Positions 13,049 to 58,100 of a DNA stretch of 64,000 bases are shown here, piece after piece; position 1 is the first letter of the stretch, and every line of letters begins with the position of its first letter. The notes under the pieces were generated by a model. The model was not told the DNA's origin, did no database searches, and saw nothing but the letters and a program-made list of their open reading frames with translations. Location: positions 19,654,001-19,718,000 of the forward strand of contig NW_024704751.1 in the NCBI RefSeq assembly GCF_018977255.1. Reading direction: 5' to 3'. This DNA comes from Callorhinchus milii. Lineage: Eukaryota. A program made the position numbers and the translations under genes.

Positions 13049-13345
13049 ATATAACACAAGCTGAAATTCACAATATAAAATAGTCTATTGTTTATTGGTG
13101 CTTCACAACACAACATTTGTGGATTTATTGTATTTTATGGAGCGAGCAGGAGGGTGGGCAAAGAGAAGACAGCTCATGTGAAGGATAACCCCAGTGAGGC
13201 ATTAATGGCTGAATGGCCTGTCCGAGTGCTGTATTATTCTGAGATTCAATTCCTCAGTGCCTGATGAATGTTGTTCCAGAATCCGAACATGAACACAAAG
13301 TTTCTCGAAGCTCCGAATGAGTTTCCAAATCTTCCTTTTCAGGAA

Positions 13346-16300
13346 TTACTGGAGAACCATCAGCACTTTGCTAAAGGTGACAAACACTCCGTGACTGAGA
13401 TTGCTGGATTAAACAGAAACAAAAAGATGAGTTTATTCTGCAGTGCAATCAATGGATTATTGAAGCGTGTTTTTAATTATTAAATCGGGATGGAATTATT
13501 TTCAACAAAACAAGTGTGCCTAGAACTGGATTTGCATATACTGAGAACAACGCTGATTGTAATCAGGATTATATTGGGATTTGTGTTAAATTTCCTCCTC
13601 CGCAACACTGCCAATCTGGGAAGCAACATTTGTATAGCAAGGAGAGAGTGACAGAAAACACTCTCCCCCACTGTCTGTAATGGACAGAGATTCCAGCTGA
13701 GTAGGATAGCACTCTAACCTACTGTTCAATTCAATATTTCACACCCCGACCCACAGAAACTCTGCTCGATTTGATCTACCGAGTTCCCATGGCTTGATAG
13801 GGATTATAACAGGATATCTTAATAATAAATAACGCAAATTAGACCTCAATGTTCCATCTGATTTTGGGTGACGGATTATAGACTCAATGTAGGCTGAGTC
13901 ACAACAAAAGGTATAGCAGAGTTCATCTTGATTTGCTCCTATTGCCTTCACATGGAAACAATGTGAATTAAATCAGTGCTAAAGCCAAAATGCAATTTGT
14001 AACCTAAAGCACAAGTGAGAACTGCTGGACTTTACTGAGAAATGAGACAGGGATTCTCAGACGTACAGAAACAGTTAATAAACAGGAAGCCCGCAATTCA
14101 ATCTGGTCTTTTTTTCTTAATTAAAAAATTTAAGAATTGTGGAGATTCTCCAAACTAGTGTTAACCTGGATGACGTTTTTTTTTCAAAAATACTGGCTTC
14201 CAAAATATGACTCGATTGAAGAATTCACTCTATTTATATTCGTCAGCATGTTTCACGTCTCAAGCACTGCCAGTTGGGCATCCGAGCTGGAGACAGGAGC
14301 TGAAAGAGTTACATACCAGTGAAAGTAACACTGTCCCTCGAACACACCGTCTCTCTGTCTGTTTTCCGGACATTCCAGTTCCACTCCGAGGCAGAATTCT
14401 GGCACATCCGGCAATCGGCCCAGATACCGCACCACCCCAGCTCCCACTCTGCCGCTGGGCAGAATCACCTTCACCCGGTGCCCAATCTGCATCTCCGAGA
14501 TGGAACGAGGGGCAAAGACTTTGGCTGGCCGTCTGCTTCTGATATCTGCCTGAAATCTGCGAGAGGGAAGATGGAAACTCGATCAGCAGACAAAGGTTTA
14601 ATAGACAAGCTACAGTCCTTAATTCTACAATTGAACCACAATAGAGTGCTGTGGTTTGGGATCTGTATGATCAGAGCCCATGTTATAACACGGCACATCA
14701 TAAAATGGCCCAGGGTCAGTGCTTCCGGGTCATTAATGTTGTCACTTCTTGCATGATATATCCCAGTAACTCTACCATGAAAGAGGATAAGATGTAATAC
14801 ATGTGATGGGCAACAGCAGCAATGCACATGGATGGAGTTTCCTAGGGACTGCAGGGACTATAAACCTCTCACTATTTTGTCCAAGCCCCACCTTGAAGAG
14901 TTTGAGCTCACAGTCTAGGCAGAAATTCCAGTGTAGTGCTGGTGGGAGCATTGCATTAAGTGAGGAGCCATCCTTTGATTGGGATGTTAAACTGTCTGCC
15001 TTTTCCACAGAGGGTTGTTAAAGATCCCTTGGCACTACTCAAAAAGAAAGAAAAGGGAGTTTGTCCTGGTCTCCTGGCCAACAATCCTCCAGAAAAGAAT
15101 GTGTAGTCACCCACTTCATGGCTGTTTGTGGGACATCTCCATGTGCAAATTGGCTGCTGCATTTGCCCATAAATATACAGTTGACAGCAATTGCCCGTGA
15201 GATGTTTTGATTGTGTAAGTGCTATATGAAATGCAAAGACAGTAATAACATAATAACAGTATAATTTGTTCAAAAACACCAAGGCTGGCAAGTAGCACTA
15301 ATCCACCAGCTGCAACAGGAATAAACAGCTCTGTTCATTTTGGGGTTTAATCACAGCTCAGAGCAGGATTCTCTCCACCAGGGTGTGAAGCACTCTAGGA
15401 CACTACACCACATGAAAGGCACTAGATAAATGCAAGTTGCTGTTGTTGTGAGTAATTGATTTCCATTAGACCGCAAACAATTTGTGAGGGCAAACCCAGA
15501 TATCCGAATATTTAAGCCCTCAAGCCAACAGTCTGATCATAAACTGATAAAGAGGATAACTTAAACTTAAACAGGATAACTTTCTGGATCAGTAGGTTTC
15601 CAGTCTAACGAGCAACGAAGCAGTGCTGGATCTAGTTCTGGGGATTGAAGTGGGGCAAGTGGAGCAGGTTTCAGTAGGTGAGCATGTGGACAACAGTAAT
15701 CACAACATCATTAGGTTTAGAATACTTATGGAAAGCAATCAAAGGTGAAGATATTCAACTGGAAGAGGGCTAATTTTAATGAGTTAAAAGGGGCCTAACC
15801 ATGGTGGACTGGAAAGAAAGATTGGCAGGTAAAACAGCTAACGAGCAATGGAAAGCCTTCAAGGAGGTTCAGTTTGGGGACAGAACAAATACATTCCCAC
15901 AAAGGGGAAAAATAGGGCATCCAAACCTCCCTGGATAAATTGGGAAATTTGGATTAAAATAAAACCGAAAAAGGAGGCTTATGATAAATGTCAAGTCCAA
16001 AACACAGAAGATAATCAAATAGAATACAGAAAGTACAAAGGAGAACTGTAAAAGGAAACAAGAGCGACAAAGAGATTGTATGAGAAAAGATTAGTGGGTA
16101 ACATAAAAGGGAACCCTAAGGTATGTAGTTTATATGGATTTTCAAAAGGCATTTGATAAAGTGCCACATAAGAGACTTGTAGCAAAATAGAAGCCCCGAT
16201 ATTAAAGGGACAGTGGCAGCGGATACAGAACTGGTTGGGAGACGGAAAGCAGAGAGTGTGGTGAACGGTTGTTTTTCTGACTGGAGGGAAGTGTGCAGTG

Positions 16301-19300
16301 GTGTCCCCCAGAGATCAGTATTGGGACCACTGCTGTTTGTGATCTATATAAATGACCTGGACTTGGGTATAGGGAGTACAATTTCCCAGTTTGCAGATGA
16401 TACTAAGCTGGAAAAGTAGTGAACAGTGAGGAGGATAGTAACAGACTGCAAATGGACATAGACAGACTGGTAACGTGGGCAGACACGGGGCAGATGAAAT
16501 TTAATGTGGAGAAATGCGAAGTGATGCATTTTGTGAGGAAGAATGAGGAGAGGCAATATAAGCTGATGGGACAATCTTAAAGGGGGTGAAGGGACAGAGA
16601 GACCTGGGGGTCATATAAGGAAATCTTTGCAGGTGGCCGGACAGGGAGATAAAGCTGTTAAAAAAGCATCCGGGATACTGGGCTTTATAAATAGGGGCAC
16701 AGAGTACACAAGTCAGGAAGTTATGATGAACGTTTATATAAAACACTGGTTAGGCCTCAGCTCGAGACTGGGTTCAGTTCTGGGCCCCACACTTTACGAA
16801 GGATGTCAAGGCATTGGAGAGGATGCAAAGGAGATTGACCAGGTACCAGGAATGAGGGGCTTCAGTTATCAGGCGAGGCGAGAGAAGCGAGGATTATTCT
16901 CCTTGGAGCAGAGAAGATTAAGAGGAGACTTCATAGAAGTTTTAAAAATTATGGGGGATTCAATAGGGTGAACAAAGAGAAACTATTTCCGCTGGCGGGT
17001 GGGTCGGTAACCCTTGTATCCCTCAAAATATACAGTCAATTCACTTTGCAGTATATACTATGAAGCCAATTTAGACTTTGACTTTCCCTGCTTCGTAAAT
17101 GTACTTTAGGATTTCAGTGTCTAACCTGGCTGGGAATTGAGGTCTCGAAACATTGCAACTCAGTGCAGATGAAGGGAGGACATCACATCCGCGCGGAAAA
17201 CTGGACGAAGGGATTCCAGTGAGCTCGAGATTTCCATTCGGCTCTCCTGTAATTGACACAACTTCCTCTGGGTCAATTTCATCAGGATCCAGCGGGAAAT
17301 CTGTAAAACCAAAGGGAACTGCATTTACTTTGCAACAAAAAAATCTTTTTACCTCCCAAAAGTTAACATTTTACAAACATAATAATGCTTACAGTTATTA
17401 TGCATAACATGATAATATAGAGTCTTATGTCATCGAGATGTCTCAAAGTGCTTCACAGGAAAGACTGCCAAGTGACTGTGACTTCTTGGAGCTGAAATTG
17501 GCTCCAAAATGACTTACTTGCCAACCGAATGGAATGTTGAAATTGAGTCAAAGTTCCAGCTTTTTAATGTGCAGGAAACATCGAGTGAGTGTGAAACTGT
17601 GTTCAGAGTGTTTAAACGGACCACATGCTTTGTGTGGTTTTCCTGCAACCTGGAGTCTACCACATGTTCTGTGATTTGATCTCTTTGTGTCTGGAATAAG
17701 TATAAAGTGATGCAGCCGTCAAGCTGCTCCATGATCTCCTCTCCTCCACCTTCAACTCTCTTGTCCCCCTAAAATCCAGGACTGGCTCCAAACCCACCTG
17801 CTCCCCTGGTACAACAGCCATCTTCGCTCCCTAAAATCACAAACCCGGTTGCTCAAGAGCAGGTGGAAGAAAACCAGCCTAGTGGTTCATTGCCAGCTGT
17901 GGCTCAAGCACCTTCACACCTACCGCCACTCCCTCTCGCAAGCAAAAACTCCATATTACTCAAAGATCATTCTGGAGACCAAAAATAACTCCAAAATTCT
18001 ACTCTCCACCACCCACCAGCTCCTCCTCTCTAGCACCCACAATCATAACATTGAATGCCAAGTGTGAAGAGGTCGTGGATTTGCTTACCTCTAAGATAGA
18101 AAACATTGCTGGAAACCTCACCCTCCCATCCTGTGTCGCCTACCGCACCCCCATTCTGTCTCCTTCACACCCCCCACACACTCCCATCTCTCCTTCCTCC
18201 CTCTCATCCTTCATCACCCTGATGATCACCCAACTCCCCCTCCTCTGCCCACTGCTGGAGACACCATTAATCAGTCCCTCTCCTCAGGATCAGTCACACT
18301 CCCTCTCAAAACCACCGTCATCACCCACCTCCTTAAAAAGACCTACACTTGATCCCTCCAACCTCGGGCACTACTGCCCTATCTCAAACCTGCCCGACCA
18401 AAGCTTTGGAACACGTTGTTGCCAACCAACTTCATGCATACCTCTCCCTCCATTCCCTATTCAAACCCATCCAGTCTGGTTTCCGCCTTGCCCACAGTAC
18501 AGAGACAGCGCTCGTGAAAGTTACAAATGATCTGCTCTCTTCTGTGACCAGGGCTCCCTCTGCCTCCGCGCCCTCCTGGACCTCTGTGTTGTTTGACACA
18601 GTCGATCACGCCATCCTCCCCCACTGTCTCTCCTCCATCATCCACCTCAGTGGGTCCGAACTCGCTTGGTTTGAGTCCTACCTTACAAACCGCCAGCACT
18701 ACATTTCTGCAAACGGTTTTCTTCTCGCCCCCCCCCCGCCCAGTCACCTGCGGGGTACGTACCCCAAGGCTTCATTCTTGGTCCCTTCTATTCCTCATCT
18801 ACATGCTCCCTCTCAGTGATGTCATCCACAGACATGGGATTAACTTCCACACGTACGCGGATGACACTCAACTCTACTTCTCCAGCTGCGTCCCCCAGTC
18901 CCCCGATGTTCTGTCAGCTTGTCAAGGCCTGGATGAGCACAACTTCTTGCAGTTAAGTGTCAACAAGATGGAAGCCATAATCTTTGGCTCCCGTTGACAT
19001 CTTCTGTCCTGCAGGTCAGACCTCAACCTACCCAATCTGTCTTTAAAATTCTCTGAACCCGTATGCAACTTAGGCGGCAGGTTTGATCCCCAGTTATCCT
19101 TCCTCCCCCACATCAGGTCCCTGGCCAGGAGTGCTTTCCTCCACCTCTGCCACATTGCCTGTCTCCGACAATACTTCACTCCACAAGCTGCCGAAACCCT
19201 TGCCCACGCCTTTGTCACCTCTCAGCTGGACGACTCAAAGGCCCTCCTTGCCGGTCTCCCCATCTTCACTATTCACAAAATTAAACTCACCCAAAACTCC

Positions 19301-22300
19301 GCCGTCCGCATTCTCACCCACACTAAATTCCACACCCTGATTATCTCAGTCCTTGCCAAACTCCATTGGCTCTCTGTCACAGATCAGATCCACTTCAAGA
19401 TCCTCACTCTAGTGTTTAAATCCCTCTATACCTTGGCACCGCCCTATCTCTCCAACCTACTTTCTCCTTACAGCACTACCATTCACAATGATGCCATACA
19501 AATGTAAGTTGTTGTTGTCATTATAAAACATTTTTCACCGCGATGGCGAAAAACGCACAGACATTGACTTTTTTTGTTCTGCAAATGATTGAGATATTTG
19601 GATTTTGAAAAGGCAAGCAAACCTTAAAATAGTTTCAGTGAATTTGCATTGTAGTAAATTCCGATGTAATTAAAGCCCAATGAGACAAGCTCAATTTTGT
19701 CACTAACCTAATGAAGGTTGACAGCTAGTCCTAGGTTCTCCTTCCTTTGACTCGGAAATGCTTATCTTGTCACTGCTGGTGAGGTCCAGCTTTCTCTGCC
19801 CACGTGCTGTTGGGAGTTGGATCTGACTTGCTGGTCTTCTCTCTGACAAGAAGATTGGCTTCATTCTCATTGATGAAATATCTTCACCCTTTCTAATTAT
19901 TGTCTGATCACTCGAGTTAGGGTGCATCTGGTGATTACAATTAATACAGAGTTTATTTTTATATAATATACATGATAAATTGGCCACTCACTTCATGACT
20001 TCATTGTCCCACAACCAGCCATGGAGTGAATGATCATTATATTTTTAATTTGGGGTATTTGTTGGCCAGGACACTGGGAGAAACTCCATTCTCTGTAATC
20101 TGCAATAAGGATAAAGAAATTAAACCTGGAACAAAACTGTCAGAAAGATCAAGGCAGTAGAACGAGATGGCTTTGGCTCAGTTACGAGGGCGAGTGTGAG
20201 TTAGGTACTTCTTTATAATGTGATGGTGGTGACATCATGGCCCAGGGGTCTGCAAACTCGTCTGAACGGAGCCTCACTGTATGTTATTGCCACCCCTTAG
20301 GTAGAAGGAATACCTCACCATCTATAAGAGCAGTACCCCCAATGCACACTCTGAGGTCCCCAGCCTTGGCTCTTTCTTGCCAACCTGCACTTAATACTTT
20401 CTGAAATTGGGCAAGCAGGGAGAGAGAAACCACATTGCATTCCAATAATTTATTTCCATGTGCAGGTGGGTTGCATAGAAATCTCTGTTTGGTCTGGACA
20501 TTCTTTTAAGCATGGTAATGGGTTTCCACGTGTGTCAGATACCCAGCGGACCAAAAAAAAGTCTGAATGAAGCATCATTTGCATGGAGTCTCACTGGCTC
20601 TTATTCCTGTAGTTTTAGTGAGTGTCAGAGTACATCAACAAAGGTGAAACACTAGGTGTTTGAGCAGGTAGTTACCTTGGAGAGACTTCTAACAAGGAGT
20701 TGGTCAATTTGCCCACCCAGCGCGACCTTTTAGCCAAAATCAATTGTAGTTTCTATTCTTATCCGTTACTCCTTGACTAGCACCAGCCAGAAACATGCTC
20801 CTGTTGAGATTCACTTGTGGTCCCCTGAACTCAACTGAATCTCACTGAGGGGGGAAGAGGATGGGAAGGATTGAGCTCCTGGCAACAGCTATGCTTTTAC
20901 CCCTCTGGTGGCTGGGAGCGGTTTTGCAGCACTTCTGATCTGAGGACTATGATCTGCTCTCATTAAGTGGAGTGGAGATACTGGAATACAACAAGAACAA
21001 TTACTTGCATTTATATAGCGCCCAACATGCAGGGTAGCGTCCCAGAGCGCTTGTCCAGAGCTCACTTGGTCACTAGGCTCAGGCTGGCTCTGCCCTGACG
21101 GAGAGGAGATCCTGTCGCTTGACCTGCTTTACATGGTTCAGGTCCACATTGTCCTTTGACAATTTGGGGCCTGGAGGAGTTTGTGGGGTGTTGGGACTTG
21201 TCTGCTGGGACAACCCTTGTTCCCTAGTGGAACGTATTTGGTATAATTTGATCAATGGGGGTGAGCAAGCCTAACCTCGCTCACCAATAAAAAGCAGCTT
21301 GTTCACCCAGCTCAAACCGTAAGTGACTTTATGTATTATAACTGACTTAATTTAAGGCTTTGGGGTGTCATCAAATTGTATGCTTGTGGATAATAAATAT
21401 TTTGAATTTATTTCGAGTAGTGCGTATTTTAATTTGTTAATATAAACCGGATACTGGTTTTGTCCTCCTGACTTGAAAAACCCTGCCCCTAAGTCACTGG
21501 GGAATTGAGTGTAAAATACTGTCTCTGTGACAATAACAAAAGGGGAATGAAATGTTGAAATGGGTTACCAGGAATGTGGGAGAAACCAGGGATGACCCAT
21601 CTCAGATAACGCAGTGTTCCCCCAACTATTGACACTGGAGTGTCAGCCTCGTCTGTGAGTTCAAAGACCTGACGTGGTGCTTGAACACACATCCTTCTGA
21701 CTAGGAGGCGGGAGTGCAATCCACCGAGCCACAGGCTGACACTGGGCTGATTTCAAGTACATATCCCTTTCAAAAGGCATTTGGATATATGCTTGAAAAA
21801 GAAAAATTGCAAGGCTATGGGTAGTGGAGCGGAACTAATCTTTCAAAGAGCCAGCACAGGCACGATGGGCTGAATGACTGCCTCCTGTGCTGTAAGATTC
21901 GATAATCCAAGTAAGCCATACAACGGAAGGAAAAAGCGATTTGTTTACCTGGTCTTTTGGTTCTCTCTGCTCTGCTGGTAACTGGTGGCATCTGCATTCC
22001 CACTCCGCCTGGAGCTTGGCGAGTTCCGATTTAAAACACTGGATTTCTTCTTCAGTCCTCTGAATTCTCTTCTTCGCCTCTTCACTCTTCTCTTGCAGAG
22101 CAACAACCTTCTGTATCAGTTCCTCTGTTACATTAAACCAAACACATGTGAGTCTAAGAGACTGGCTCAAAAATCAGTTGCCTGAACATAATATCCCCTT
22201 GGTCTTAGCCTCAAAACCATTTTGTCTATAAAAATGAACATTGCACAGAATTGTGGAACATGTACGGTTCAGTGTGAATCAGGAAGCTAGTTTTCCACAG

Positions 22301-24409
22301 TTCTTTAGGTTATAAATCAAGACTGAATTAAAAAAATTTCTACAATTTTGCGCAATCTGAAATTTCAAGAGAAAATGGAAATTAAGACTAAGGCTATCTG
22401 ATTTTCAGGCCTTACAGTCTAAACAAATTAAGAGCTGGTCTCCCCATCAAGTGGTGTCTGACATGAAATCTTAACACGTTTCCAGCTTCATTGTACATTA
22501 TTCTATTCCTCACCAAAACTGCATTGATATGTCCCATATCAGGAGTATCAGTCAATGTTATTAAAATGGGTCGTCCTGATGTGAAAGGCGCTAAATCAAA
22601 TGCAAAGATTATTATTTTATTATTACAGTGAATGCTATTAAATCAAATGTCATTGACCATTTCAATAACATTAATACATTAATTATATATTAATGCAGAT
22701 ATTAATGCAGTTTTGGTGAGTCATAGAATAATGTACAGTGAGTGTACCGACTATATTTTGCTGACTGGCTATTTGGCACACATTAAATGACGAGTGGGCT
22801 GCAATTACATTGGATGGAGTGGGAGTCCGAGTAGTGGAAGATGGGGAATAGTATGTTTGTGACCAAAGACAGTCAAAGAGGAATTTTCGATGGATTTTGA
22901 ATGTGGCGAGAGATCTGCAGCTCGTGTACTATCCCGCACCAGACTTCGGGACCACATCACTCCCACCCTCGCTCGCCTCCACTGACTCCCCATCCCCTAG
23001 AGGATCGATTTCAAGATCCTCATCCTCGCCTACAAGGCCATTCACGGCCTCGCTCCCTCCTACCTCTCTGATCCACTATCCCCCTACCTACCTGCCCATA
23101 CCCTCCGTTCCTCTGGCTCCGGTCTGCTCCACACGCCCACCCCAACCGCCCTACCATCAGTGGCCTTCAGCCTCTCAGCCCCGAGGCTCTGGAACTCTAT
23201 CCCCCAGTGCCTTCGCCGCCTCCTCCCTTTCCTCCTTCAAGGCCGGTCTCAAGACCTTTCTCTTTGACCGAGCCTTCAGCTCCCCTCTCGACTCTCTACC
23301 CCCTCCTCGCTCCCTCCCTTCCCTCACCCTGACCATTTCCCTCCTGCTCGGGTCCTGACCCAACTGTACAGCGCCTTGGGACGTCCTCCCGACATGAAAT
23401 AAATGGAATCTTGTTGTTGTTGAGATAGTGTGAGGTCCAGGGATTTGAGGAGAGTTCCAGAAAGCGGGGCAGAATTGGCTGAAAGCTCGCTCTCCAATGG
23501 TCTCAAATAAATTGCTGTCAAGTGTAGTGACTTTATTAGTCAGACAAACTGTGCTGCACATTTGAACTTTTTGACACAATAAAACAAAGATAGATTGTTA
23601 GTTTCAACGAACCCGTTTTAAGATTAAAAGGTGCACATATGTGACTCAACACTAACAACAACAAACATTTTTAAACATTTCACATTTTTAAAGCACCTTT
23701 CACGTCAGGAAGACGTCCCAAGGTGCTGGACAGACAGAGTTATGTACCCGAGCTGAGAGTCGGGGTGGGGGAGGCCAGTAGTGGGGGAAGCAGGGAGATT
23801 CAAAGCACGGTCGAAGAGGAGGGTTTTGAGGTGGGTACTGAAGGTGGCGAGGGAGGGGACGAGGCAGAGGGACTGCAGGATGGAGTTCCAGAGAGTGGTT
23901 GCAGTGTGTCAGGAGGCCCACCCGCCAATAGTGGGGTGAGCAGGGAAGTAGGCCAGAGCCCGCTGAGCGGAGGGAGCGAATAGGGTAGAAGGGGGTTAGG
24001 AGGTTGGAGAGGAAGGGGGGAGCAAGACCGTGGAGGGCATTGAAGGTGAGGATCAGGATCTTGAACTGTATTCAGATGGGTAGACTTGGACCGATGGGTC
24101 GAATGATCTCGTTCTGCACTGTGACTGTGATATCTAGGGTTGTAAAAGTCTGCAGCTGTTGGGAAGTTTGTTAATGATAGATAACTCTTTACATCTGAAC
24201 TTCAGTCACACTGGAGCCATGCCTGCCTCGCCTCGCTCACTGTGATCAGCTGTAATCAGGTTTGGCTTGTGCAGGGGATCTCGTCAGGTGCAGACCTGAC
24301 GAGATCCCCTACCTGTGTGTTGAGAGTCAGTCAGGAACACAGGTGGCACTCGCAGCTGCTCTGTTATTGCCCCGGATGCCAGCTCCGGGAACTCTGCCGC
24401 ATGTTTGAC
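13346..24409 (-). CDS. Uncharacterised coiled-coil protein with C-terminal CAP-Gly domain (spliced; 5' end uncertain)
   Basis: Exons 24409-24313, 22124-21949, 19927-19708, 17300-17126, 14556-14317, 13403-13346. All have AG/GT sites and compatible phases (966 nt, 321 aa + TAA). The last two exons give [23 protein letters not shown]...[38 protein letters not shown], a CAP-Gly domain. AATAAA at 13092-13097. Confidence 0.8.
15590..17010 (+). mobile_element. CR1-type LINE fragment with internal deletion (intronic)
   Basis: [44 protein letters not shown]; the sequence jumps at about 16120. Confidence 0.88.
17690..19520 (+). mobile_element. L2-type LINE ORF2 remnant (intronic)
   Basis: [36 protein letters not shown] motifs across frameshifts; (gtt)n tail. 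Confidence 0.9.
22920..23420 (+). mobile_element. L2-type LINE 3' end
   Basis: LHx[15 protein letters not shown] motif and L2 tail; a near-identical copy lies on the minus strand at 28355-28800. Confidence 0.85.
23690..24075 (-). mobile_element. L2-type LINE 3' end
   Basis: Reverse-complement similarity to the other L2 3' ends (tail ttgggacgtcttcctgacgtgaaagg). Confidence 0.75.
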
Positions 24410-26519
24410 CTGAAAAGGCAACAAAAAGTAGCAAAAAAAGACAAGAAAATAAATCCCAATGAGTCTGTGAACATACTGTAGACCTCCAGTGTAGAAACAG
24501 GGTAAAACATTGACAGTTCCATTTAACATAATAATCCTTGCATTTGATATAGCGCCTTTTGATGTCGTTAAGACGTCTCAAAGCGCTTCACAGTGTATAC
24601 TGTAAAGTGAATTGACTGTGTATTTTGTAGCTGAAACGTAGCAGCCAATTGTGCACAGCAACGTCACATACACAGTCGTGGATTGAGTGACCACATTTTT
24701 TTTTGAAAAGCGGCGTGTGGATAAGGAACCTTGCCTACCGTTTCGCCCTACCCGGGAATTGAACTTGGGCCCTCTCGCTTGCGAGGCGAGTGCCCTAATC
24801 AATACACTACAAGGACATGACATTCTGGTAAATAAACAATCCTTGGCTTACATTTGTTTCAGGGTTGAGAGTGTCAAAGCACTTTACAGGTGTATTGTAA
24901 GCATGCTCAGTGACCACTTTGCACACTATCAAGTCTCACAAACACCCATGAAGTTAATGACTAACGACTGCAGGATTGCTGGCCAAGAAACCAGGCAAGT
25001 GGTCCTGAGACCTCGGTTTGATGTTTCATCCAAAAAATGGCTTGGGTTGGATGGGTTGGAGGATTGGATTGTGTTTGGATGAGATGGTATTGGAGGGTTT
25101 TATTGAGTAGGGTGAGTTAGATTAGGTTTTGTCTGATGATGACTTTTTGTGTATATTCAGAAAACACTGCACTTGAATTCGAGGCCAGGCAGAGATGGAG
25201 ATACACTTGTGAGATACCCTAACGTTAAATAGAACCAGAAGCAAGTTTTGAGCTGAACTGATCACTGCAACATCCTAACACTGGGATCTGTGGTCTCATT
25301 CAGATTCAGTTCCAGTGAGTGACAAATACGTCTTCTCTAAATAAATAATGAATTAGCCCAGACAAAAATGGCCATAGCTCCAGTTAGCAATACCAATAGA
25401 TCCTGTGTATGGAGCAGGGGAGAGGGATTAAGATTTTTTTAAATTCATGCAATATTCATCTGACAAACTGAATGTGTAGCGCTTAGGAGTTAGTTGTGTT
25501 TCAGTTTTACACAATCTCAATAGTTTTTCAGAATAAGCACCTACAGAGCTGGGTTTGGGTTTAACTCTAGGTGCCAACTATACGACAATTAAATGACTAC
25601 TCTCACAAGAGGTAATACTAGACAGTCTCCAATTGAACTCTTGCTCTTGTTATTTTGAACCTTTTAATCGTTCACTGTGTGGCTGAGCAACACTGCTCAT
25701 GTTTCAGTTATTCACAACCTGTTCATGTACGATGTGAGAGTGACAGTTACTACGTTCCTCTGAACTTGCAGGATGTACAGGGTGTCCACAAAGTCCTGTT
25801 ACCCTCTGTTTTGTGTCTTACAATGAATTTTTATTTTCTGTTACAGATGAGTTGAGTGTAACAATGTCTGACATCAGTGACCTCCTCCTCACTGACTCCA
25901 TCCACATTACGGGAAATGTTGCACGGAACAAGGTGCCGAGTTATTATCTGTCGTGAAAATGATGGCGCTCGCACACACCAATCCTCCGGACGTCTAAACA
26001 CAGTTAAACACTTGTACTGAATGCAATGAAGTACTTCTGAATACAATTATCATCATTCTTCCACATGATTCAGTTGTTGGTCAGTGCACTGGATAAAAAA
26101 ATAAATGGGTAACAGAACTGTGTGGACAACCTGTAGAATAAAGAGACACTCACTATAGTGGTTGAGTAACAGAGAGGATCTGGGCTCGGTCCAGTGTTGC
26201 TCAGTTTGCGCTGCAACAAAGTAAAACGAGAGTTCACACGTTAGATTCCCCTCTGCAGCAAAGTGTATAATAAGGGTTTGAGGGACTTAGTCACTTTTGG
26301 TCACATTATCATTCGGTTCAACACATTTTGACTTGTGTTATGAAGTTAATAAATACCTGTAATGTTTTATTTTTCAGTGTACTCCACACGACACAAGCTA
26401 CGACTACACCTGCACAATCTGCCAACCTGCAGTCGTGGTGTATATGGATAAGGTACTGAGAGGGTACAATAGAGCCCATTATAAGGCACGTAGATTTGTT
26501 CATAACACAGTGACCTGGG

Positions 26520-26777: not shown

Positions 26778-27925
26778 CATTCAAACGCACAGGCAGGCAG
26801 ACAAGCAATGTGGCATTGGAGGGATAAACAGATTGTGACAGAAACAGGTGGAATCTTGGTTGGAGATGATTTGTTTTCTATTTGCTTTGATGATTAGCCT
26901 GTAAGCCGCTAGAACCTTCCCACCACACACACAAACTCCAGTCCATTTTGCACATGTTCCAGTGTCTAAACACATAGCCAGGGGGTAATAGACTATTTTT
27001 TAACAGTAACATTTTGCGGAATTATCTGCTGAGAAGTACAAGGAAGATTAGTCAAATCGTTACCACCAACGTCATCCTCCACCAGTTCAGCATTCTGCTG
27101 AGAATCGTCGCTAGAGCCAGGCGTAGGTGCTGCAGGACCATCTCTGCTTAATGTCCCTTCTTTGGCCAGTTGTACGTCCACCTCTGGATTACAGCTCTTC
27201 ACTGTACCCTGTGGAACTGCTTCACCCGCTAGATGCTACCGAAAGATACAGAATTAGCTTTCTACAAACACTTGTTCGGTCTTCAACAACAGCAACAATA
27301 ACTTGTAGACAGCCCCTTTCAAGTAGTCAAATGTCTCAAAAACACTTTACAGAGATGTAGTAGGATGCAAAGCTGGGGAGAGATTCGAGGTGGGGGGTGC
27401 AGGAGGTGGGCAAAGATGGAGTTGAAGAGGTACATTTTCAGAACAACAACTTGAATTTATATAGTGTCCTTTACATGGGGTAGCACATTGGAGTGCTTCA
27501 AGGTTTCTGAAGGCGGGGTGGGGGTGTTGAGATAGGGGAATTTGGGGACAGATTGCTAGAAACCTGGGGTAAAGTGGCGGAGGGGAGAGGACAGGGTGGA
27601 AAAAAAAGACAGAAGACGAAAGAGGAGAGAAGATAAGAACAAGAAAATTGGAAGTGAAAGAATATATATATAAAAAAGTGCAGCCAATATTTGTTCCTCC
27701 TGGTTTCACAAATCTTCACATTCAAAGACACAGGCAGACAGACAAGCAGTGTAACGTTGGGGTATAAATAGATTGTGACAGAAACAGGTGGTCTCTTGGT
27801 TGGAGATGTTTTATTTCTAGTTTGTTTGAGGATGTCAGCTGCTTTAAATCGTAAGAACAGAAATCAGCGAAAACCTTTCCACCACGCACACAAACTCTAG
27901 TCCACTTTACACAAAACTAAACACA
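26778..27925. repeat. Diverged ~200-bp direct duplication (26778-26975 and 27717-27925)
   Basis: Shared blocks acattcaaa..cacaggca.gcagacaagca, agattgtgacagaaacaggtgg..tcttggttggagatg, ccaccac.cacacaaactc.agtcca, ctaaacaca. Confidence 0.85.
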
Positions 27926-31666: not shown

Positions 31667-41450
<9,784 letters not shown>

Positions 41451-46325: not shown

Positions 46326-49300
46326 TCAATCATCTACTTCCTCATCTTCGTCTTCATCCTGCTCTTGTTTTGCGTCCACCTCAGCCGTGTCTGAGAACTC
46401 GTGGAGAATGACATACTCCCTGCTGCTGAAGCCAAACTTCAGCACATCTTTTTCTCGGAGTTCATAGTAGCGCTGGGCCTCGATGCGCTGGTTGTTGAGG
46501 TACGTGCCGTTGGCAGAGCCCAGGTCGATGATGTACGGTCTCACCCTGCGGCCTGCCGTGCCATCGTTCCGTGTGTACCCCACAAGTCTGCAGGTGTGAA
46601 AACATAAACCATTACTTCTGTATGTGCCATCCCTAATAATAAATCCATTTAATACAGTGCCTACAACATCACAATGTCTCAAACTGCTTCACAGGGAACT
46701 GCTGTAAATTGCAATCACTGCATGGAGTCCTGTAGCTCAGTGGTTAGAGCAGCGAGAGATCTGGGTTCGATTCGATTCCTTACTCCACACACCTGATAAT
46801 AATCTCTCAAGAAAAAAAACAATAATAAATTGGTCACTTCAATCCACGACTGTTTGTGGGACACTGTTGTGCGCAATTGGCTGCCGCGTTTCACCCACAA
46901 ATATACAGTCAATTCACTTTACAGTATATTCTGTGAAGCGCTTTGAGACGTCTGCAAGGATTATTGTATACTATATTTATTTAATACGCAGCTAATTTGC
47001 ACCCAGCAATGTCCCACAAACAGCCATGAAGTGAATGACCAATTCATCTAGAAGATTGTTGGACAGGAAACCAGGAGAAAGTTCCTTCAAATAGTGTCAT
47101 CCAGCTTTAACATCCAGCTCAACAATGGGGCCTTGGTTTAAAATCTCTTCTGAAAGATAGAATGTCTGACAATGTAGTGCTCCCCCACCTCCCCATGGAA
47201 CTGGAATGTCAGCCTAGACCATGAGCTGTGTGGGGCTTCAACCCACAGCCTTCTGACTCAAGACGACCGGTATAAAAGTCATCATGAATCTCTGTATAAA
47301 AAAAACAGGATAGACCAGCTGGAAATGGTGTGATCCCAGAGATTCAGGGTGGAATGGCTACTAAGCCCACCTTGAGGCAGGGTCTACATCAGGGCCTGGA
47401 TTTTCCCTGCTGCAATAGAACTGTAGGAGGTGTGAATTCCTCAACAACGTACCCTTAAATTTCTACCGAATCTAGCCAAGAACTTCCAAGCAACCTTTTC
47501 AAAGGGAAGTGACAAGAGTCTTGCATTGCTGCTGTGTTACTAAGTGATTTTACAAGCACCACTTTAATAATAATAATCCTTGCATTTGATTTTGCGCCTT
47601 ATCACATCACTGAGATGTCTCAAAGCTTTTCACAGGACATACTGTAAAGTGGATCGACTGTGTAGTTTGTGGGCGAAATCTGCAATAATATGCAAAACTA
47701 TTGCATGCATTAATTATTGACATTAATAGGATTAATAATATGCAAGAGTGATTGTTTCTAGAGCTCTGCGCATTTGATAACCTGAGTTTCAGTAAACTTA
47801 GTTGCAGCTCTGACAAAATCAATTGGCATCAGTGAAACTAAGGCTTCCTCCTACTGCTCTCAAGCTGTCTTATCACCGACAGCGATTCGAAAGTCGATAT
47901 TCAGGTCTTATGTCCAACCCAGGAGGGAAGGGACAAAACAGAGGGCAAGGCACACAAGAGAAGCCAGAGGATAAAAGTAGATGGCAGAGAAAAATTTGGG
48001 GACAGAAAAATGCAGCTTCTGTAACACAGGACTGCAGTCAGGCAGATTAAAACTGGACTGCATGGAACATAAGCGGTTTATGCCTGTACATTCTGTATGT
48101 GGTGGCGTAGATCAACATCAGTGTAACGGTTTGGAGAACTATCAATTTTACAGTCAAGCTCGGGAACAGTACACAGAGATAGATTGCGATATTCAGATTT
48201 TGTAAGTACGAAATCTCTCGTTCTGATTACACATCAGCACCAACCTGTACTGCAGCACTGCATGTTGTTTGGAGCAGGAGGGGTGATCGATCGGGATATC
48301 CACTATCCTACGTTGCCGCCCCAAAAGATAGGCACTCTGACGATGAATGTGCATGACTGGGAGAGGCTCATCGTTCTTAAAGGGATAAAGACGCCACCTT
48401 TTCTTTGGGATTCGGGACTCTGGGGGTTCGCTGTATTTTATAACCACTCCACGAAAGGTATTTGCATCCTCTGCAAGAGCTCCTGAGAGCTCAAAGCTTG
48501 GCTCCTCCTTTGGCTGCGTGCTCTCGCCACCGTTGACCTGACTGTCCCTCGAATCAGATTCTGGATTCTCGTTGGAAAGGGTCTGGAGATTTTGGCGGTT
48601 CTGACGCCTTCGCTCATTCTGATATTCACGCTCTGCCTGTTGCTCATTCAGCTGCAGGCTCTCCCGGTCGCGGCCACTAACCCCAGGCTCTGCGCGGGGC
48701 CTCATGTTCCTCTCATCGTGAGCTCGCCCTCGGTCAGATGCCTCTCTCCGTCGGTCTCGGTGGCCATCCTTTTTACGCTTGTGCTCGTCACCTTCTGAAC
48801 GATCTCGGTGTCGTCTTTCCTTGTGCTGCCTTCGAGCATGATCTTGTGGTTCCTGTATTGAGATGAAAAGAAATACTAGCTGTCACTCCAGAAACATTTA
48901 AATCAAAGTGAGTTTGCTCAAACACACACAGATGCCCCTTTCAATACAATGAAATTTGGACTCATCATGTCACTTGGCCACTTTTGATAATTACGCTTAC
49001 TTGGTTCTAGGCTGACTTCCCGATGGGGGGAGGGGTGGGGGGGAGTTTTGGGCTGTTGGGAGCTCCCATCCTTTGTCATAGACATTGAAACCATCCAGAC
49101 AAATGTTAAAGATCGCAATCACAATATGAGAAGAAGGGAATTTCAGTAGACAATCCTCTCACTCTGCCTCTATAAGGCGCTTTCAGACATTTTTCCTACA
49201 TGACTAGCAATGAATAAGTGCAAATCATTGTAGTTTGGAAACTCTGAAGCATAAAGTTTCTGTGTGTCTGACACTAAGCCTGTGCAACCAAAAACATATT

Positions 49301-52027: not shown

Positions 52028-52041
52028 GTTGCCATAGCAAC
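52028..52041. promoter_or_regulatory. RFX X-box GTTGCCATAGCAAC
   Basis: Canonical near-palindromic X-box 76 bp upstream of the DNALI1 ATG, as expected for a motile-cilia gene. Confidence 0.85.
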
Positions 52042-55100: not shown

Positions 55101-58100
55101 TCTGTCTACATCACCCATCCCAAGCCCTCCAAAAGCCAAACCCCTTTTAGAGGATGTCAGCAGGCAGACAGAGGAGATTTTAAATGCAATCTTGCCTCCC
55201 AGGTAATATGACAGATTGTCATTCATAATCGTTGTTTAGGAATGTTTGAGAAAATCGGCCTGAAAATAAAAACCTTTTGGTACCTAATTTGTTTTATTGT
55301 TGCCGGTTTCCCCCCTCTCCCTTCTCTGCAGATCTTGTCTCGTGACAGGACTTGGTTCACCAGCAATCCCCCAGTATCTCCGCCAAATTGGTGATGAAAG
55401 CTGTTCAGCTCTGGAGGACATAAGCTCTGAATCCAAATCTGTCCTCAGCCGATGTCCCCATGTGCACACTTAGTACTGGGGTGGCCACTGAACTCAGGAA
55501 GGGCAAGGAAAACCTGGGACATTGTGTTCAGCCACTACACCCCAAAGCTTTGGAACTCACTCCCCCAATCCCTCCGCCTTCCCCCTCCATCCCCTCTTTT
55601 GGATTAAGACTGAAGACCATCCTCTTAGATAGAACTTAAGGTCACCTCCTCCCTCTCCCCAGCTTGGTGTCAGGCTCCTCCACTGTTAAGCCTTTGAAAC
55701 ACTGGCGCGCCTGAAGGGCGCTATATAAATGCAACCTTTCCCCTTCTCTAACTCGCAAAAACCCTGAAAGAGCATTGGTGTCATTGACTTTGCTTAAAAA
55801 GTGAGACCATGAGACGATTGGAACCTTTGAGGGGCATTGTGCCCTCCAAAATAGGTCAGATTTGGGAACAGAGTGAGGATATGCTATTTTACCCAGATTG
55901 TGTCTCACTTTCTTTGTAGAACTATACCATCAGATCTCGAGCTGAAGCCTTATTCCCTAGGGCGCCTTGGTTAACAAGTGCATGAATGCATTAAGTGCTT
56001 TTGCTGAGCGAAAGAGTCATTGCAATTCTTCATCTCTTACGTGAAACGTCTTGTGGGAGGGGGAGACCACAAGGGAAAGCGAAGAAACGGAGTTACAGCA
56101 GCACAAACTCGCACTTCTGAAGCACCTTTCATGTAGGAAAATGTCTCCAAGCAGTTAGTAGCAGGATAAGTAGGTAGGAGATGACGACATTTACAATCAA
56201 AGAAATCAGATTTTGGATGGGTTTTCAAATCAAAGAGGGAGGAAGCAAGGTAGAGGGATTTGGGGAACAAGTGCCAGAGAACAGGGGCGTCAGTGCTGAA
56301 AGCTTACTTGCAGGTGTTGGGGAGGAATGGATGAGGACATGCAGAATCCTGAGTTGGCAGTGGATGATGGATGAGTGGGACCATAGTAGGTTGCTGAAGT
56401 GGTCGGGGGGGACAAGACTGGAGGCATTTGAAGGTAAGAACAAGGATCTGAAAAAGCAGAGACAAAGCCAAACACATTATGCGGTTGCACTGGATCAAGC
56501 CTTGGGTTTTGTGTTGTGCTGCAGAGAATGGGCGGAGAACGGACAGCTTTGGGTGCAGCAGGTCTCCAGCAATCCATGCACACGTATCGATGTCGTCCAC
56601 CTGCAGGAACAACTGGACCTGAAGCTGCAGCAGAGGCAGGCTCGGGAGACCGGCATCTGCCCAGTCCGCAGGGAGCTCTACTCACAGTGCTTTGGTGAGC
56701 GGTACCCCTGCAGAAGGAACAAGGAAACAAGGAAATTTGGCTGATTGAGCCTGCTCCGCCATAGCCATTCTATGGCCCATCCACTACAACCTCCCCTAAT
56801 CCCAATCCCCTGCCGTATCCTTCAATAACATTACACCCCAAGTGTCTCTCAACCTCTCTCTTAAATCCCTCGATTGACTTCTCCCACTGATTTTCTGGGG
56901 CAGAGAAAGAATTCGTTGACACCCTCACTGGGCAATGGTCACCCATCACCCCATATTCAAAAGAGAAGACTATTTGAGAGTAGAATGTTTTATGTGAGTG
57001 ACGTTTCGTGTTATGGCGGAGCAGGCTCTGCTATGGCGGAGCAGGCTCAATCAGCCAAATTTCCTTGTTTCCTTGTTCACAGATGAACTGATTCGGCAGG
57101 TCACCATTAACTGTGCAGAACGTGGGCTGCTCTTGTTGCGAGTCCGTGATGAGATCCGTATGACCATCTCTGCCTATCAGACACTGTACGAAAGCAGTGT
57201 GGCCTTCGGGATGAGGAAAGCCTTACAAGCGGAAGAGGGCAAGGCAGACATGGAGAAAAAGGTAGAGGCTTGGAGTTAGTTAAAAGATGTAACTCATTAA
57301 CTTGTGTAAATAATGAGGCATATTTTATAAATAAACACTATCACAATGTTTAGGCAGTGAGTAAGTTGAAATTTAAATATCTTACTGTGTGAAATCTGAT
57401 CAGAGCAGAATCTAGAAATTACCAAAATATCTAACACTTGCATTTTGCCAGACTGGAATCAAGGCCTTCCACTAAATACATATTTCTTCATAAAGCTTCT
57501 GCTTCCAAGCACCTACAACAACAACAAATTGCATTTGTATAATGCTTTTCACATCAGGAGGATGTCCCTATCCTAGAATGCTGGACAGTAAAGGATTTGG
57601 ACCCAAGCTGAGGGTTGGATGTCCCTATCCTAGAATGTCCCTATCTCAGTGCAAAGAGATATTTTAATGACCTTTTCTCCTTTGTCTTTATGTGGAAACA
57701 GACAACAGTAAAATACAGCAAATCTGTTTCCTGGATTTAATGCTTAAAGGAGCAAGATGTGGGGTTTAATAATAATAATCCTTGCATTTGATACCGCGCC
57801 TTCTCATGACTTCTCATGACTTCTCAAAGCGCTTTACAGGATACACCATAAAGTGGATCGACTGTATATTTTGTGGGTGAAACATAGCAGCCAATTGTGC
57901 ACAGCCATGTCCCACAAACAGTCGTGGATTGAGTGACCAAACTATTATCATTATTTAATTTTTAAAAAAATTCTCCTTCCCTTTTCAGATCGCTGATTTG
58001 GAAGTAGAAAAGAAAGAACTGGAGAGACAGGTGAACGAACAGAAAGCAAAGTGTGAAGGAATAGAAAAGCGAGAGAATGAAAGACGGCAAGTGGATGACA

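What the first reader, a model, noticed from the sequence alone, without database searches (positions are those of the whole stretch)
13346..24409. Unnamed coiled-coil + CAP-Gly gene downstream of MEAF6
Seen: six exons with canonical splice sites and matching phases join into a stop-free 321-codon ORF. It has a coiled coil ([42 protein letters not shown]), an S/P-rich linker and a single C-terminal CAP-Gly split over two exons. The ORF track shows only fragments of it. Known: the size and architecture do not match CLIP1-4, DCTN1, TBCB, TBCE, CEP350, KIF13B or CYLD as I recall them, and in human ZC3H12A follows MEAF6 with no such coding gene between them. Inference: a microtubule- or cilia-related gene kept in this lineage and lost in mammals.
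Basis: partly seen in the sequence, partly recalled or inferred. Interest (0 to 1): 0.85.

Follow-up and report, generated by a model that had tools for sequence, protein, structure and literature searches.

The report
Unnamed vertebrate CAP-Gly gene beside MEAF6
This is a real, spliced and expressed elephant-shark gene for a small coiled-coil protein ending in a CAP-Gly domain; it belongs to an unstudied gene family found from sharks to turtles, and no mammalian member turned up.

Summary
The six exons are real. Their borders, phases and 321 codons match two database models of Callorhinchus milii LOC103187315. One 1601-nt spliced contig from a public run joins three of them exactly at the predicted borders.

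Its "exon 1" follows an acceptor and has no in-frame ATG. Two further coding exons (ATG at 27141) give 366 aa and a conserved basic N-terminal helix.

The gene is not lineage-specific. Full-length relatives occur in sharks, skates, coelacanth, lungfish, ray-finned fishes, amphibians and turtles. Bird and lizard models keep the helix and coil but lack the CAP-Gly. No mammal appeared in any search.

A green-turtle model fuses MEAF6 to this gene, so the adjacency is old. A longer sister family reaches a tunicate and a crinoid.

No family member examined keeps the lysine of the GKNDG ligand loop (0 of 33), so a classical tubulin-tail reader is doubtful. A role in microtubules or cilia is untested. 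No paper was found.

The scan's earlier notes on this gene are on this same window only.

The parts
27064..27141 (-). Coding exon 1 (78 nt): ATG at 27141, with an in-frame TAA three codons upstream. It encodes the basic N-terminal helix (MVLQHLRLALATILSRMLNWWRMTLV).
   Evidence: tblastn of NCBI model P0149 gives 100% identity. The sequence was read. Donor is GTAACG. The model's N-terminal helix region (residues 1-31) is 51% identical to four shark orthologues.
26154..26210 (-). Coding exon 2 (57 nt, RKLSNTGPSPDPLCYSTTI).
   Evidence: The peptide was located. Acceptor TTGTTGCAG and donor GTGAGT were read.
25166..25246 (-). Alternative 5' exon used by the Ensembl/UniProt model P0001. It has no ATG, a stop seven codons upstream of the model's first residue, and a weak donor GTTTTC.
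   Evidence: tblastn of P0001; sequence read. It has no counterpart in the shark proteins.
24313..24409 (-). It follows acceptor TTTTCAG and has no in-frame ATG.
21949..22124 (-).
   Evidence: AF2 helix 74-136. Heptad register.
19708..19927 (-).
   Evidence: Record 1 of run X2 covers 19708-19932 with 0 mismatches. The five extra letters are shared by the intron end and the end of the previous exon.
17126..17300 (-).
   Evidence: Joint 17300->19708 (skips 2407, CT..AC on the plus strand, which is GT..AG on the minus strand) in X2 record 1. The in-phase alternative acceptor at 17318 was not seen.
14317..14556 (-).
   Evidence: Pfam CAP_GLY 34.1 bits on this exon alone. Joint 14556->17126 (skips 2569, GT..AG on the minus strand) in X2 record 1. 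HMMER hit P0001 at 100% identity.
13346..13403 (-).
   Evidence: The model has strands 353-357 and 361-365 at pLDDT about 94.
13114..13345 (-). Probable 3' UTR (about 232 nt), with AATAAA at 13129-13124.
   Evidence: X2 record 1 has 290 nt beyond exon 7, which equals the 58 nt of exon 8 plus 232 nt (arithmetic). Poly(A) signal found. A contig cannot prove an RNA end.
32327..41240 (-). Neighbour for context: MEAF6, same strand, directly upstream. Its last coding exon is about 5.2 kb from the CAP-Gly gene's ATG.
   Evidence: Pfam NuA4 56.4 bits on 38345-38560. tblastn of the MEAF6 part of turtle model P0177 hits 38473-38351, 37089-36997, 36399-36349, 35132-34938 and 32374-32327. The first exon near 41.2 kb was read by eye.

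Best explanation
The locus is the protein-coding gene LOC103187315 of the elephant shark. It has eight coding exons on the minus strand (27141 to 13346) and encodes 366 aa. It is transcribed from its own unit directly downstream of MEAF6. The protein has four parts: a basic amphipathic N-terminal helix, a heptad coiled coil of about 60 residues, a disordered Ser/Pro-rich linker of about 140 residues, and a CAP-Gly domain that ends the chain. It is the chimaera member of an unnamed family of jawed vertebrates, sister to a longer family with the same C-terminal CAP-Gly that also occurs in a tunicate and a crinoid. How it most likely works is inference, which I put at about 0.4. The coil makes a parallel dimer. 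The N-terminal helix places that dimer on a membrane or organelle surface, or serves as a targeting signal. The flexible linker, probably phosphorylated, presents two CAP-Gly domains that clamp a partner's peptide in the conserved groove. The lysine and asparagine that read EEY/F tails are replaced throughout the family, so the partner is probably not bound in the classical tubulin/EB tail mode. Within tetrapods the CAP-Gly looks progressively dispensable: its core is degenerate in several frogs, it is absent from bird and lizard models, and no gene was found in mammals.
For: Shown. (1) Exon structure: all 7 introns are GT..AG and the CDS is 1101 nt. Two independent database models lie back on the exons. 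(2) Expression: in 1 of 4 runs laid, a 1601-nt contig at depth 69 covers three exons with 0 mismatches, with joints exactly at 14556/17126 and 17300/19708. Two 200-base bins inside the introns (14650-14849 and 17850-18049) have zero depth in that run. (3) Domain: Pfam CAP_GLY scores 49.7 bits against a cut-off of 26.5. The AF2 domain has pLDDT about 95. Every listed Foldseek match down to rank 45 is a CAP-Gly structure, and 31 matches have E<=0.001. (4) Family: the HMMER scan of 1.84 billion representatives gave 136 hits. Named members come from sharks, skates, coelacanth, lungfish, bichir, sturgeon, gar, bowfin, teleosts, salamander, frogs and turtles. (5) Constraint: compared with the other groups, the CAP-Gly is 45-67% identical and the linker 11-33%. 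(6) Tree: the short (27 rows) and long (10 rows) families split with 100/99 support, and C. milii is sister to elasmobranchs with 99/96. (7) Synteny: the Chelonia mydas 'MEAF6' model P0177 carries MEAF6 followed by this gene's second exon onward, 91% identical to Caretta over 157 aa. (8) Ligand loop: K at position 2 in 0 of 33 members, N at position 3 in 1 of 33. The role of this motif is taken from passages of PMC3806363. (9) N-terminus: helix 2-31 has pLDDT 83-91. The first 35 residues carry net charge +5. The Kyte-Doolittle maximum is under 1.6 in 16 of 17 relatives, so this is not a clear transmembrane segment.
Against: Function is not shown by anything here: there is no binding, localisation or phenotype data. 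The spliced contig comes from a single run whose RNA nature is the tool's guess, and its tissue is coded. The other 3 runs have zero depth in the bins that hold the CAP-Gly exon (14250-14649). Only two junctions were seen directly. The first two coding exons rest on the NCBI model plus shark homology, not on reads. The C. milii protein departs from family norms: R instead of G at loop position 1 (1 of 33), terminal Q where E is nearly invariant, and CNLSHG instead of CKPGHG. 'No mammal' is weak evidence. The word-indexed searches scored only 5250, 7122 and 8000 candidates, and names were obtained for only 33 of the 136 HMMER hits. The bird and lizard models lacking a CAP-Gly may be truncated predictions.
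Confidence: 0.8

Rival explanations
1. One reading: a classical microtubule or cilium protein whose CAP-Gly reads the EEY/F tails of alpha-tubulin or EB proteins, like CLIP-170 or p150Glued.
For: The domain is a confident CAP-Gly fold and is under constraint. The long sister family keeps the lysine (GKHDG or GRHNG). The axonemal gene DNALI1 lies 25 kb away in the window, which is weak evidence.
Against: Loop position 2 is never K (0 of 33) and position 3 is N in 1 of 33. PMC3806363 (passages) describes this loop as the tubulin-binding motif, with the asparagine bonding the EE[Y/F] tail. No X-box match lies at 29.9-30.4 kb; the only perfect X-box in the window is at 52028-52041, near DNALI1. 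The model's pLDDT dips to 78 at the loop.
Confidence: 0.25
2. In the elephant shark the gene is decaying: a transcribed but functionally relaxed copy.
For: C. milii alone has R at loop position 1, a terminal Q in place of the nearly invariant E, and CNLSHG in place of CKPGHG. Expression was seen in 1 of 4 runs.
Against: The 366-codon frame is intact with 7 canonical introns. The mRNA is spliced at depth 69. The CAP-Gly is 67% identical to sharks against 33% in the linker. The domain is modelled at pLDDT about 95. The terminal branch is of ordinary length (0.19 against a median of 0.14).
Confidence: 0.07
3. It is a mislabelled orthologue of a named CAP-Gly gene. NCBI labels some members CLIP4, CLIP4-like or CEP350-like.
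For: These are automatic names given by the sources. The best PDB sequence match is the CEP350 CAP-Gly.
Against: The protein has a single CAP-Gly at the very C-terminus of 310-366 aa, and Pfam finds no other family. The CEP350 match covers 75 residues at E 3.5e-9, whereas family members score E 1e-17 to 1e-24 in a library about ten thousand times larger. The locus sits beside MEAF6. C. milii also has a separate long paralogue.
Confidence: 0.03
4. The exons are alternative 3' exons of MEAF6 (a read-through unit), not a gene of their own.
For: The green-turtle model P0177 splices MEAF6 onto this gene's second exon. Both genes are on the same strand and about 5 kb apart.
Against: The 1601-nt contig leaves 671 nt upstream of exon 19927-19708. 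That fits 408 nt of own coding sequence plus a UTR of about 263 nt, but not some 600 nt of MEAF6 coding sequence as well (arithmetic). The gene has its own ATG with an in-frame stop just upstream. The N-terminal exon is conserved in sharks. The turtle model loses the frame before the CAP-Gly.
Confidence: 0.03

Closest known systems
Long sister family, unnamed (C. milii LOC103186410, 817 aa; members in gar, bowfin, sharks, frogs, a caecilian, a crinoid and a tunicate)
   Same: Coiled coils followed by a CAP-Gly that ends the protein. Both share the lead-in R-x-F-x-P-R-S..DL..G and the ending FSKV[IL]MAWE. The two are sister groups in the tree.
   Different: 460-2092 aa instead of about 260-370. 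The loop keeps K or R (GKHDG, GRHNG). The N-terminal helix was not examined in this family. It lies at a separate locus, and several species have both copies.
TBCB (tubulin-folding cofactor B)
   Same: A small protein with a coil and a C-terminal CAP-Gly. It is the closest match in overall layout and the third-best Foldseek hit (1whg, E 1.8e-5).
   Different: TBCB has an N-terminal ubiquitin-like domain (recalled; architecture discussed in PMC3806363, passages only) and a GKNDG loop. Here Pfam finds no such domain, the N-terminus is a basic helix and the loop is RQRDG.
CEP350 CAP-Gly domain (PDB 2coz)
   Same: Best sequence match among solved structures (E 3.5e-9 with the gar member). Its loop, as shown in that alignment, is also non-canonical (GNNNG).
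   Different: CEP350 is a very long centrosomal protein with an internal CAP-Gly (size recalled). The similarity is confined to about 75 residues.
CYLD third CAP-Gly (PDB 7owc, bound to ubiquitin)
   Same: Best Foldseek E-value (1.0e-5, 72 aligned columns, rmsd 2.4 A). It is an example of a CAP-Gly used for a ligand other than tubulin tails, according to the entry title.
   Different: CYLD is a deubiquitinase with three CAP-Gly domains. The match is 30% identical and says nothing specific about the ligand here.

Membership tests
CAP-Gly domain proteins (Pfam PF01302) | Match to the CAP_GLY profile above the gathering score | tested here: met
   34.1 bits (cut-off 26.5) on exon 14556-14317 alone, profile positions 1-51. 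49.7 bits on P0149, profile positions 1-65 of 65.
CAP-Gly domain proteins (Pfam PF01302) | CAP-Gly fold | tested here: met
   AF2 residues 280-366 have pLDDT about 95. Foldseek against the PDB gives 31 hits with E<=0.001, and all listed matches to rank 45 are CAP-Gly structures, with target TM-scores up to 0.83 and rmsd about 2 A.
CAP-Gly domain proteins (Pfam PF01302) | GKNDG ligand-loop motif | tested here: not met
   The window has RQRDG. In 33 family members, K at position 2 occurs in 0 of 33, N at position 3 in 1 of 33, G at position 1 in 26 of 33, D at position 4 in 20 of 33 and G at position 5 in 27 of 33.
CAP-Gly domain proteins (Pfam PF01302) | Binding of EEY/F tails or microtubules | not testable with these tools
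   Needs peptide-binding and microtubule assays.
CLIP4 (label given by NCBI to the coelacanth, lungfish, bichir and whale-shark members) | Several CAP-Gly domains plus ankyrin repeats (recalled) | tested here: not met
   One CAP_GLY match and no other Pfam family in P0149 and P0190.
CEP350 (label given to the gar, sturgeon and Arapaima members) | Very long protein with an internal CAP-Gly (recalled) | tested here: not met
   Members are 291-366 aa and the CAP-Gly ends the chain. Similarity to 2coz is limited to the domain.
TBCB | N-terminal ubiquitin-like domain before the coil and CAP-Gly (recalled) | tested here: not met
   No ubiquitin-like family found by Pfam. The N-terminus is modelled as a single helix 2-31 followed by disorder.
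Unnamed short family (LOC103187315-like) | N-terminal helix, a coil with the conserved W-E-x-R-[FY]-x-E-L core, a Ser-rich linker, and a C-terminal CAP-Gly preceded by R-[VA]-[FY]-x-P-[RH]-S | tested here: met
   Alignments A1 and A3. C. milii groups with elasmobranch members at 99/96 inside the short clade, which has 100/99 support.
Unnamed short family (LOC103187315-like) | Position directly downstream of MEAF6 on the same strand | tested here: inconclusive
   Met in the window and implied for Chelonia mydas by the fused model P0177.

The most novel reading that the evidence does not exclude
LOC103187315 and its long sister form an ancient deuterostome branch of CAP-Gly proteins that has never been studied. 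The short form has given up the EEY/F-reading lysine and asparagine and recognises a different peptide. It is held on an organelle or membrane by its basic N-terminal helix. Tetrapods dismantled it stepwise: the domain core decays in several frogs, the CAP-Gly is lost in birds and lizards, and the whole gene is lost in mammals. That would make it a natural experiment on what a CAP-Gly groove can be retuned to do.
Probability: 0.3. Interest if true: 0.65.

Novelty: new variant of a known kind. Interest (0 to 1): 0.5.

Why it matters
The list of animal CAP-Gly proteins is short and is usually drawn from mammals. This adds a conserved family, about 450 million years old by its spread from chimaera to turtle, that mammals seem to lack. 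It has its own architecture and an altered ligand loop throughout.

It would correct misleading automatic names (CLIP4, CLIP4-like, CEP350-like, 'tubulin-folding cofactor E') that the sources give to some members; two automatic Atlas clusters of about 100 members each appear to correspond to the family. It gives a dated gene-loss marker inside the conserved DNALI1-SNIP1-MEAF6 block. It also offers fish and frog models for testing what a CAP-Gly without the GKNDG lysine binds.

Tried and rejected
For the same reason no orthologous coding DNA was available, and dN/dS could not be computed. Per-region protein identity is a substitute, not an equivalent.

The ESM Atlas search with the lizard protein, leaving CAP-Gly clusters out, gave only scores of 0.81 or lower and generic coiled-coil folds. 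It produced no mammalian lead. The search with the gar protein returned only the family's own clusters.

A transmembrane anchor at the N-terminus was considered and set aside. The Kyte-Doolittle 19-residue maximum exceeds 1.6 in only 1 of 17 relatives.

A free C-terminal 'AWE' ligand motif was considered. The model makes these residues the last strand of the domain (361-365), so their conservation may be structural.

The window holds 7 matches with up to one mismatch against 10.6 expected by chance, and none lies in that region.

Papers: 0 papers hold any of six LOC identifiers. 0 hold 'CAP-Gly' with 'lost in mammals'. 0 hold five of six CAP-Gly family terms. These searches cover main texts only. 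Supplementary tables, where LOC identifiers from expression studies would sit, were closed, so 'not in print' is limited to that extent.

Full report
WHAT IS THERE. The window is from the elephant shark Callorhinchus milii. The translation of exon 14556-14317 is 100% identical to UniRef A0A4W3IV00_CALMI, 'Uncharacterized LOC103187315'. They total 966 nt, that is 321 codons and a TAA. Acceptors and donors are canonical and the phases fit (0/1, 1/0, 0/1, 1/2, 2/2, 2/stop). Each exon was searched on its own. The full-length protein was taken from database records that the tools returned.

THE MODEL IS INCOMPLETE AT THE 5' END. It has no in-frame ATG; the nearby ATG at 24402 is in another frame and meets a stop after 12 codons. 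The NCBI model (P0149, isoform X2, 366 aa) adds two coding exons. The first is 27141-27064, with the ATG preceded by an in-frame TAA three codons upstream. The second is 26210-26154. With these the CDS is 1101 nt, and all seven introns are GT..AG. The Ensembl/UniProt model (P0001, 348 aa) instead uses an exon at 25246-25166, which has no ATG and a weak donor. The NCBI start is the better supported one. Its peptide aligns with the N-termini of four shark proteins, and the model's N-terminal helix region (residues 1-31) is 51% identical to them.

EXPRESSION. The one search for runs listed 13 runs of one species label plus a second label. I laid four of them (X2, X4, X5, X6) on 14250-20249; all are contigs and their RNA nature is a guess. 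In X2 one 1601-nt contig (depth 69.1, minus strand, 0 mismatches) covers 14317-14556, 17126-17300 and 19708-19932. Its joints lie at 14556/17126 and 17300/19708, and both are GT..AG on the minus strand. Two 200-base bins inside the introns (14650-14849 and 17850-18049) have zero depth in X2, so this is spliced RNA. The five letters beyond 19927 are identical in the intron end and in the end of the preceding exon, which fits the predicted junction. By arithmetic, the contig has 671 nt before that exon: 408 nt of coding sequence in the NCBI model plus about 263 nt of UTR. It has 290 nt after exon 14556-14317: the 58-nt last exon plus about 232 nt. It therefore ends about 10 nt after an AATAAA at 13129-13124. 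X4, X5 and X6 have zero depth in the bins that hold the CAP-Gly exon (14250-14649) and little or none over exon 19927-19708. The mRNA was thus seen in 1 of 4 runs. Sample names are coded, so the tissue is unknown. The in-phase alternative acceptor at 17318 was not used.

THE PROTEIN. Pfam finds CAP_GLY on 1 of 5 exon pieces (34.1 bits, cut-off 26.5). The coil exon gives only 11 sub-threshold coiled-coil-type matches and the other three pieces give nothing. On P0149 the domain scores 49.7 bits over the whole profile, residues 292-361. An AlphaFold2 model built from a 33-sequence family alignment has mean pLDDT 66.3 and pTM 0.34. It has three confident parts: helix 2-31 (pLDDT 83-91), helix 74-136 (about 90) and the CAP-Gly at 280-366 (about 95, dipping to 78 at the RQRDG loop). 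The rest is below 50. Foldseek against the PDB gives 31 matches with E<=0.001, and every listed match to rank 45 is a CAP-Gly structure. The best are CYLD CAP-Gly3 bound to ubiquitin (7owc, 1.0e-5), TBCB (1whg) and dynactin, at rmsd about 2 A. One heptad register in 74-136 has hydrophobic a/d positions in 11 of 18 cases. The linker 137-275 is 16% Ser and 11% Pro. The N-terminal 35 residues carry net charge +5 and no acidic residue in the helix. The Kyte-Doolittle maximum is below 1.6 in 16 of 17 relatives, so this is an amphipathic basic helix and not a clear membrane span.

THE FAMILY. The exhaustive HMMER scan with the CAP-Gly exon found 136 proteins at E<=0.001, 35 at E<=1e-10 and 1 at E<=1e-30. 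I looked up 30 of them, of which 29 carried a name, and 4 more were named. None is from a mammal. Proteins of 260-370 aa with the same layout come from the following groups:
- Sharks: Heptranchias, Heterodontus, Pristiophorus, Chiloscyllium, Rhincodon.
- Batoids: Narcine, Rhinoraja.
- Coelacanth, lungfish and bichir.
- Sturgeons, paddlefish, gar and bowfin.
- Teleosts: Myxocyprinus, Xyrauchen, Chaetodon, Chelmon, Albula, Dallia, Arapaima, Engraulis.
- Axolotl and many frogs.
- Turtles: Pelodiscus, Caretta, Mauremys, Lepidochelys and others.
All are labelled 'uncharacterized' or carry automatic names such as CLIP4, CLIP4-like or CEP350-like.

AMNIOTES AND MAMMALS. Predicted proteins of lizards (Podarcis, Pogona) and birds (Pyrgilauda, Aquila, Melanerpes, Haliaeetus, Ara) keep the N-terminal hydrophobic region and a nearly invariant coil core, but have no CAP-Gly. 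Pfam finds none in the Aquila protein. The three word-indexed profile searches returned 17 of 5250, 14 of 7122 and 27 of 8000 scored candidates, with no mammal among them. This is absence among annotated proteins in incomplete searches, not proof of genomic loss.

CONSTRAINT, PARALOGY AND SYNTENY. Against the other groups, the C. milii CAP-Gly is 45-67% identical and the coil 24-51%, while the linker is only 11-33%. A longer family (460-2092 aa) shares the same terminal CAP-Gly, including the lead-in and the ending. It includes C. milii LOC103186410, sharks, gar, bowfin, frogs and a caecilian, and it also occurs in the crinoid Antedon and the tunicate Clavelina. In a tree of the last 92 residues, 27 short and 10 long rows separate with 100/99 support. 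C. milii's short copy is sister to elasmobranchs (99/96), and ray-finned fishes, frogs and turtles each form groups (omitted rows are listed under Tried and rejected). In the window the gene lies directly downstream of MEAF6 on the same strand, with SNIP1 and DNALI1 beyond. A green-turtle record named MEAF6 (P0177) consists of MEAF6 spliced onto this gene's second exon onward, 91% identical to the loggerhead orthologue over 157 aa. This implies the same adjacency and orientation in a turtle.

HOW IT MAY WORK. Passages of PMC3806363 describe GKNDG as the nearly universal tubulin-binding loop of CAP-Gly domains, with the asparagine bonding EE[Y/F] tails. Here the loop is RQRDG. Among 33 family members, position 2 is never K (Q in 16, L in 13) and position 3 is N once (H in 12, R in 11), while the flanking glycines and the D/N are mostly kept. 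Several frogs have a degenerate domain core. I infer a coiled-coil dimer that presents two CAP-Gly domains on long flexible linkers, positioned by the N-terminal basic helix, and binding a peptide in a way that differs from the classical tail-reading mode. I put this mechanism at about 0.4. A classical microtubule-tail reader is about 0.25. Nothing here tests either, or a link to cilia.

COMPARISON WITH KNOWN FAMILIES. The protein meets the profile and fold tests for a CAP-Gly domain but fails the GKNDG test. It fails the architecture tests for CLIP4, CEP350 and TBCB. By sequence the nearest solved domain is CEP350's (E 3.5e-9 with the gar member). By layout the nearest is TBCB. By descent the nearest is the unnamed long family.

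NOVELTY AND VERDICT. The gene is already predicted in NCBI and Ensembl, so its existence is on record. The family has no name, and I found no paper on it in main texts (supplements were closed). It is a new variant within a known kind of protein. Interest is moderate (0.5): a specialist would be mildly surprised by a conserved, mammal-lacking CAP-Gly family with an altered groove, and the questions it raises are directly testable in fish or frogs. The scan's other notes on this gene (s1-906164, s1-906165) are on this same window, not on other DNA.

Noticed in passing
window 52028-52041: A perfect palindromic X-box-like site (match to the RFX consensus with 0 mismatches on both strands) lies upstream of the DNALI1 exons at 56-58 kb, in the interval beyond SNIP1. 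It fits a ciliary-gene promoter for DNALI1. The window-wide count of matches is at chance level (7 against 10.6 expected).
   Followed up: partly
The coding start is at 27141, not here. The spliced contig leaves room for about 263 nt of 5' UTR, and a possible acceptor lies near 27238, so an upstream non-coding exon is neither shown nor excluded. No X-box match with up to one mismatch lies in 29.9-30.4 kb.
   Followed up: partly
window 25166-25246: The Ensembl/UniProt model of the gene starts in an exon with no ATG, a stop seven codons upstream of its first residue and a GTTTTC donor. The NCBI model uses two other exons that are conserved in sharks. The UniProt entry is probably mis-modelled at its 5' end.
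   Followed up: partly
P0177 (Chelonia mydas record named MEAF6): This is a chimeric gene model: MEAF6 residues followed by the neighbouring gene's coil region, then an out-of-frame tail. It is useful as synteny evidence but is an annotation error in the source.
   Followed up: yes
P0156, P0052, P0038, P0064 (Xenopus, Aquarana and two unnamed frog-like members): In these proteins the central CAP-Gly core, including the loop and the YF.C motif, is degenerate, while the flanking strands and the last 11 residues stay conserved. Bird and lizard models lack the domain altogether.
   Followed up: partly
window 15450-17050 and 18450-19450: Introns of the gene hold LINE reverse-transcriptase fragments and SINE-like repeats. 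These attract very high contig depth in all four runs (up to about 23,000), and none of it relates to the gene.
   Followed up: no
window 46329-48882 (minus) and 56178-58276 (plus): SNIP1 (FHA domain, 43.3 and 22.7 bits) and DNALI1 (Ax_dynein_light, 115.4 bits) lie beyond MEAF6. The window therefore carries the block DNALI1-SNIP1-MEAF6 followed by the CAP-Gly gene.
   Followed up: yes
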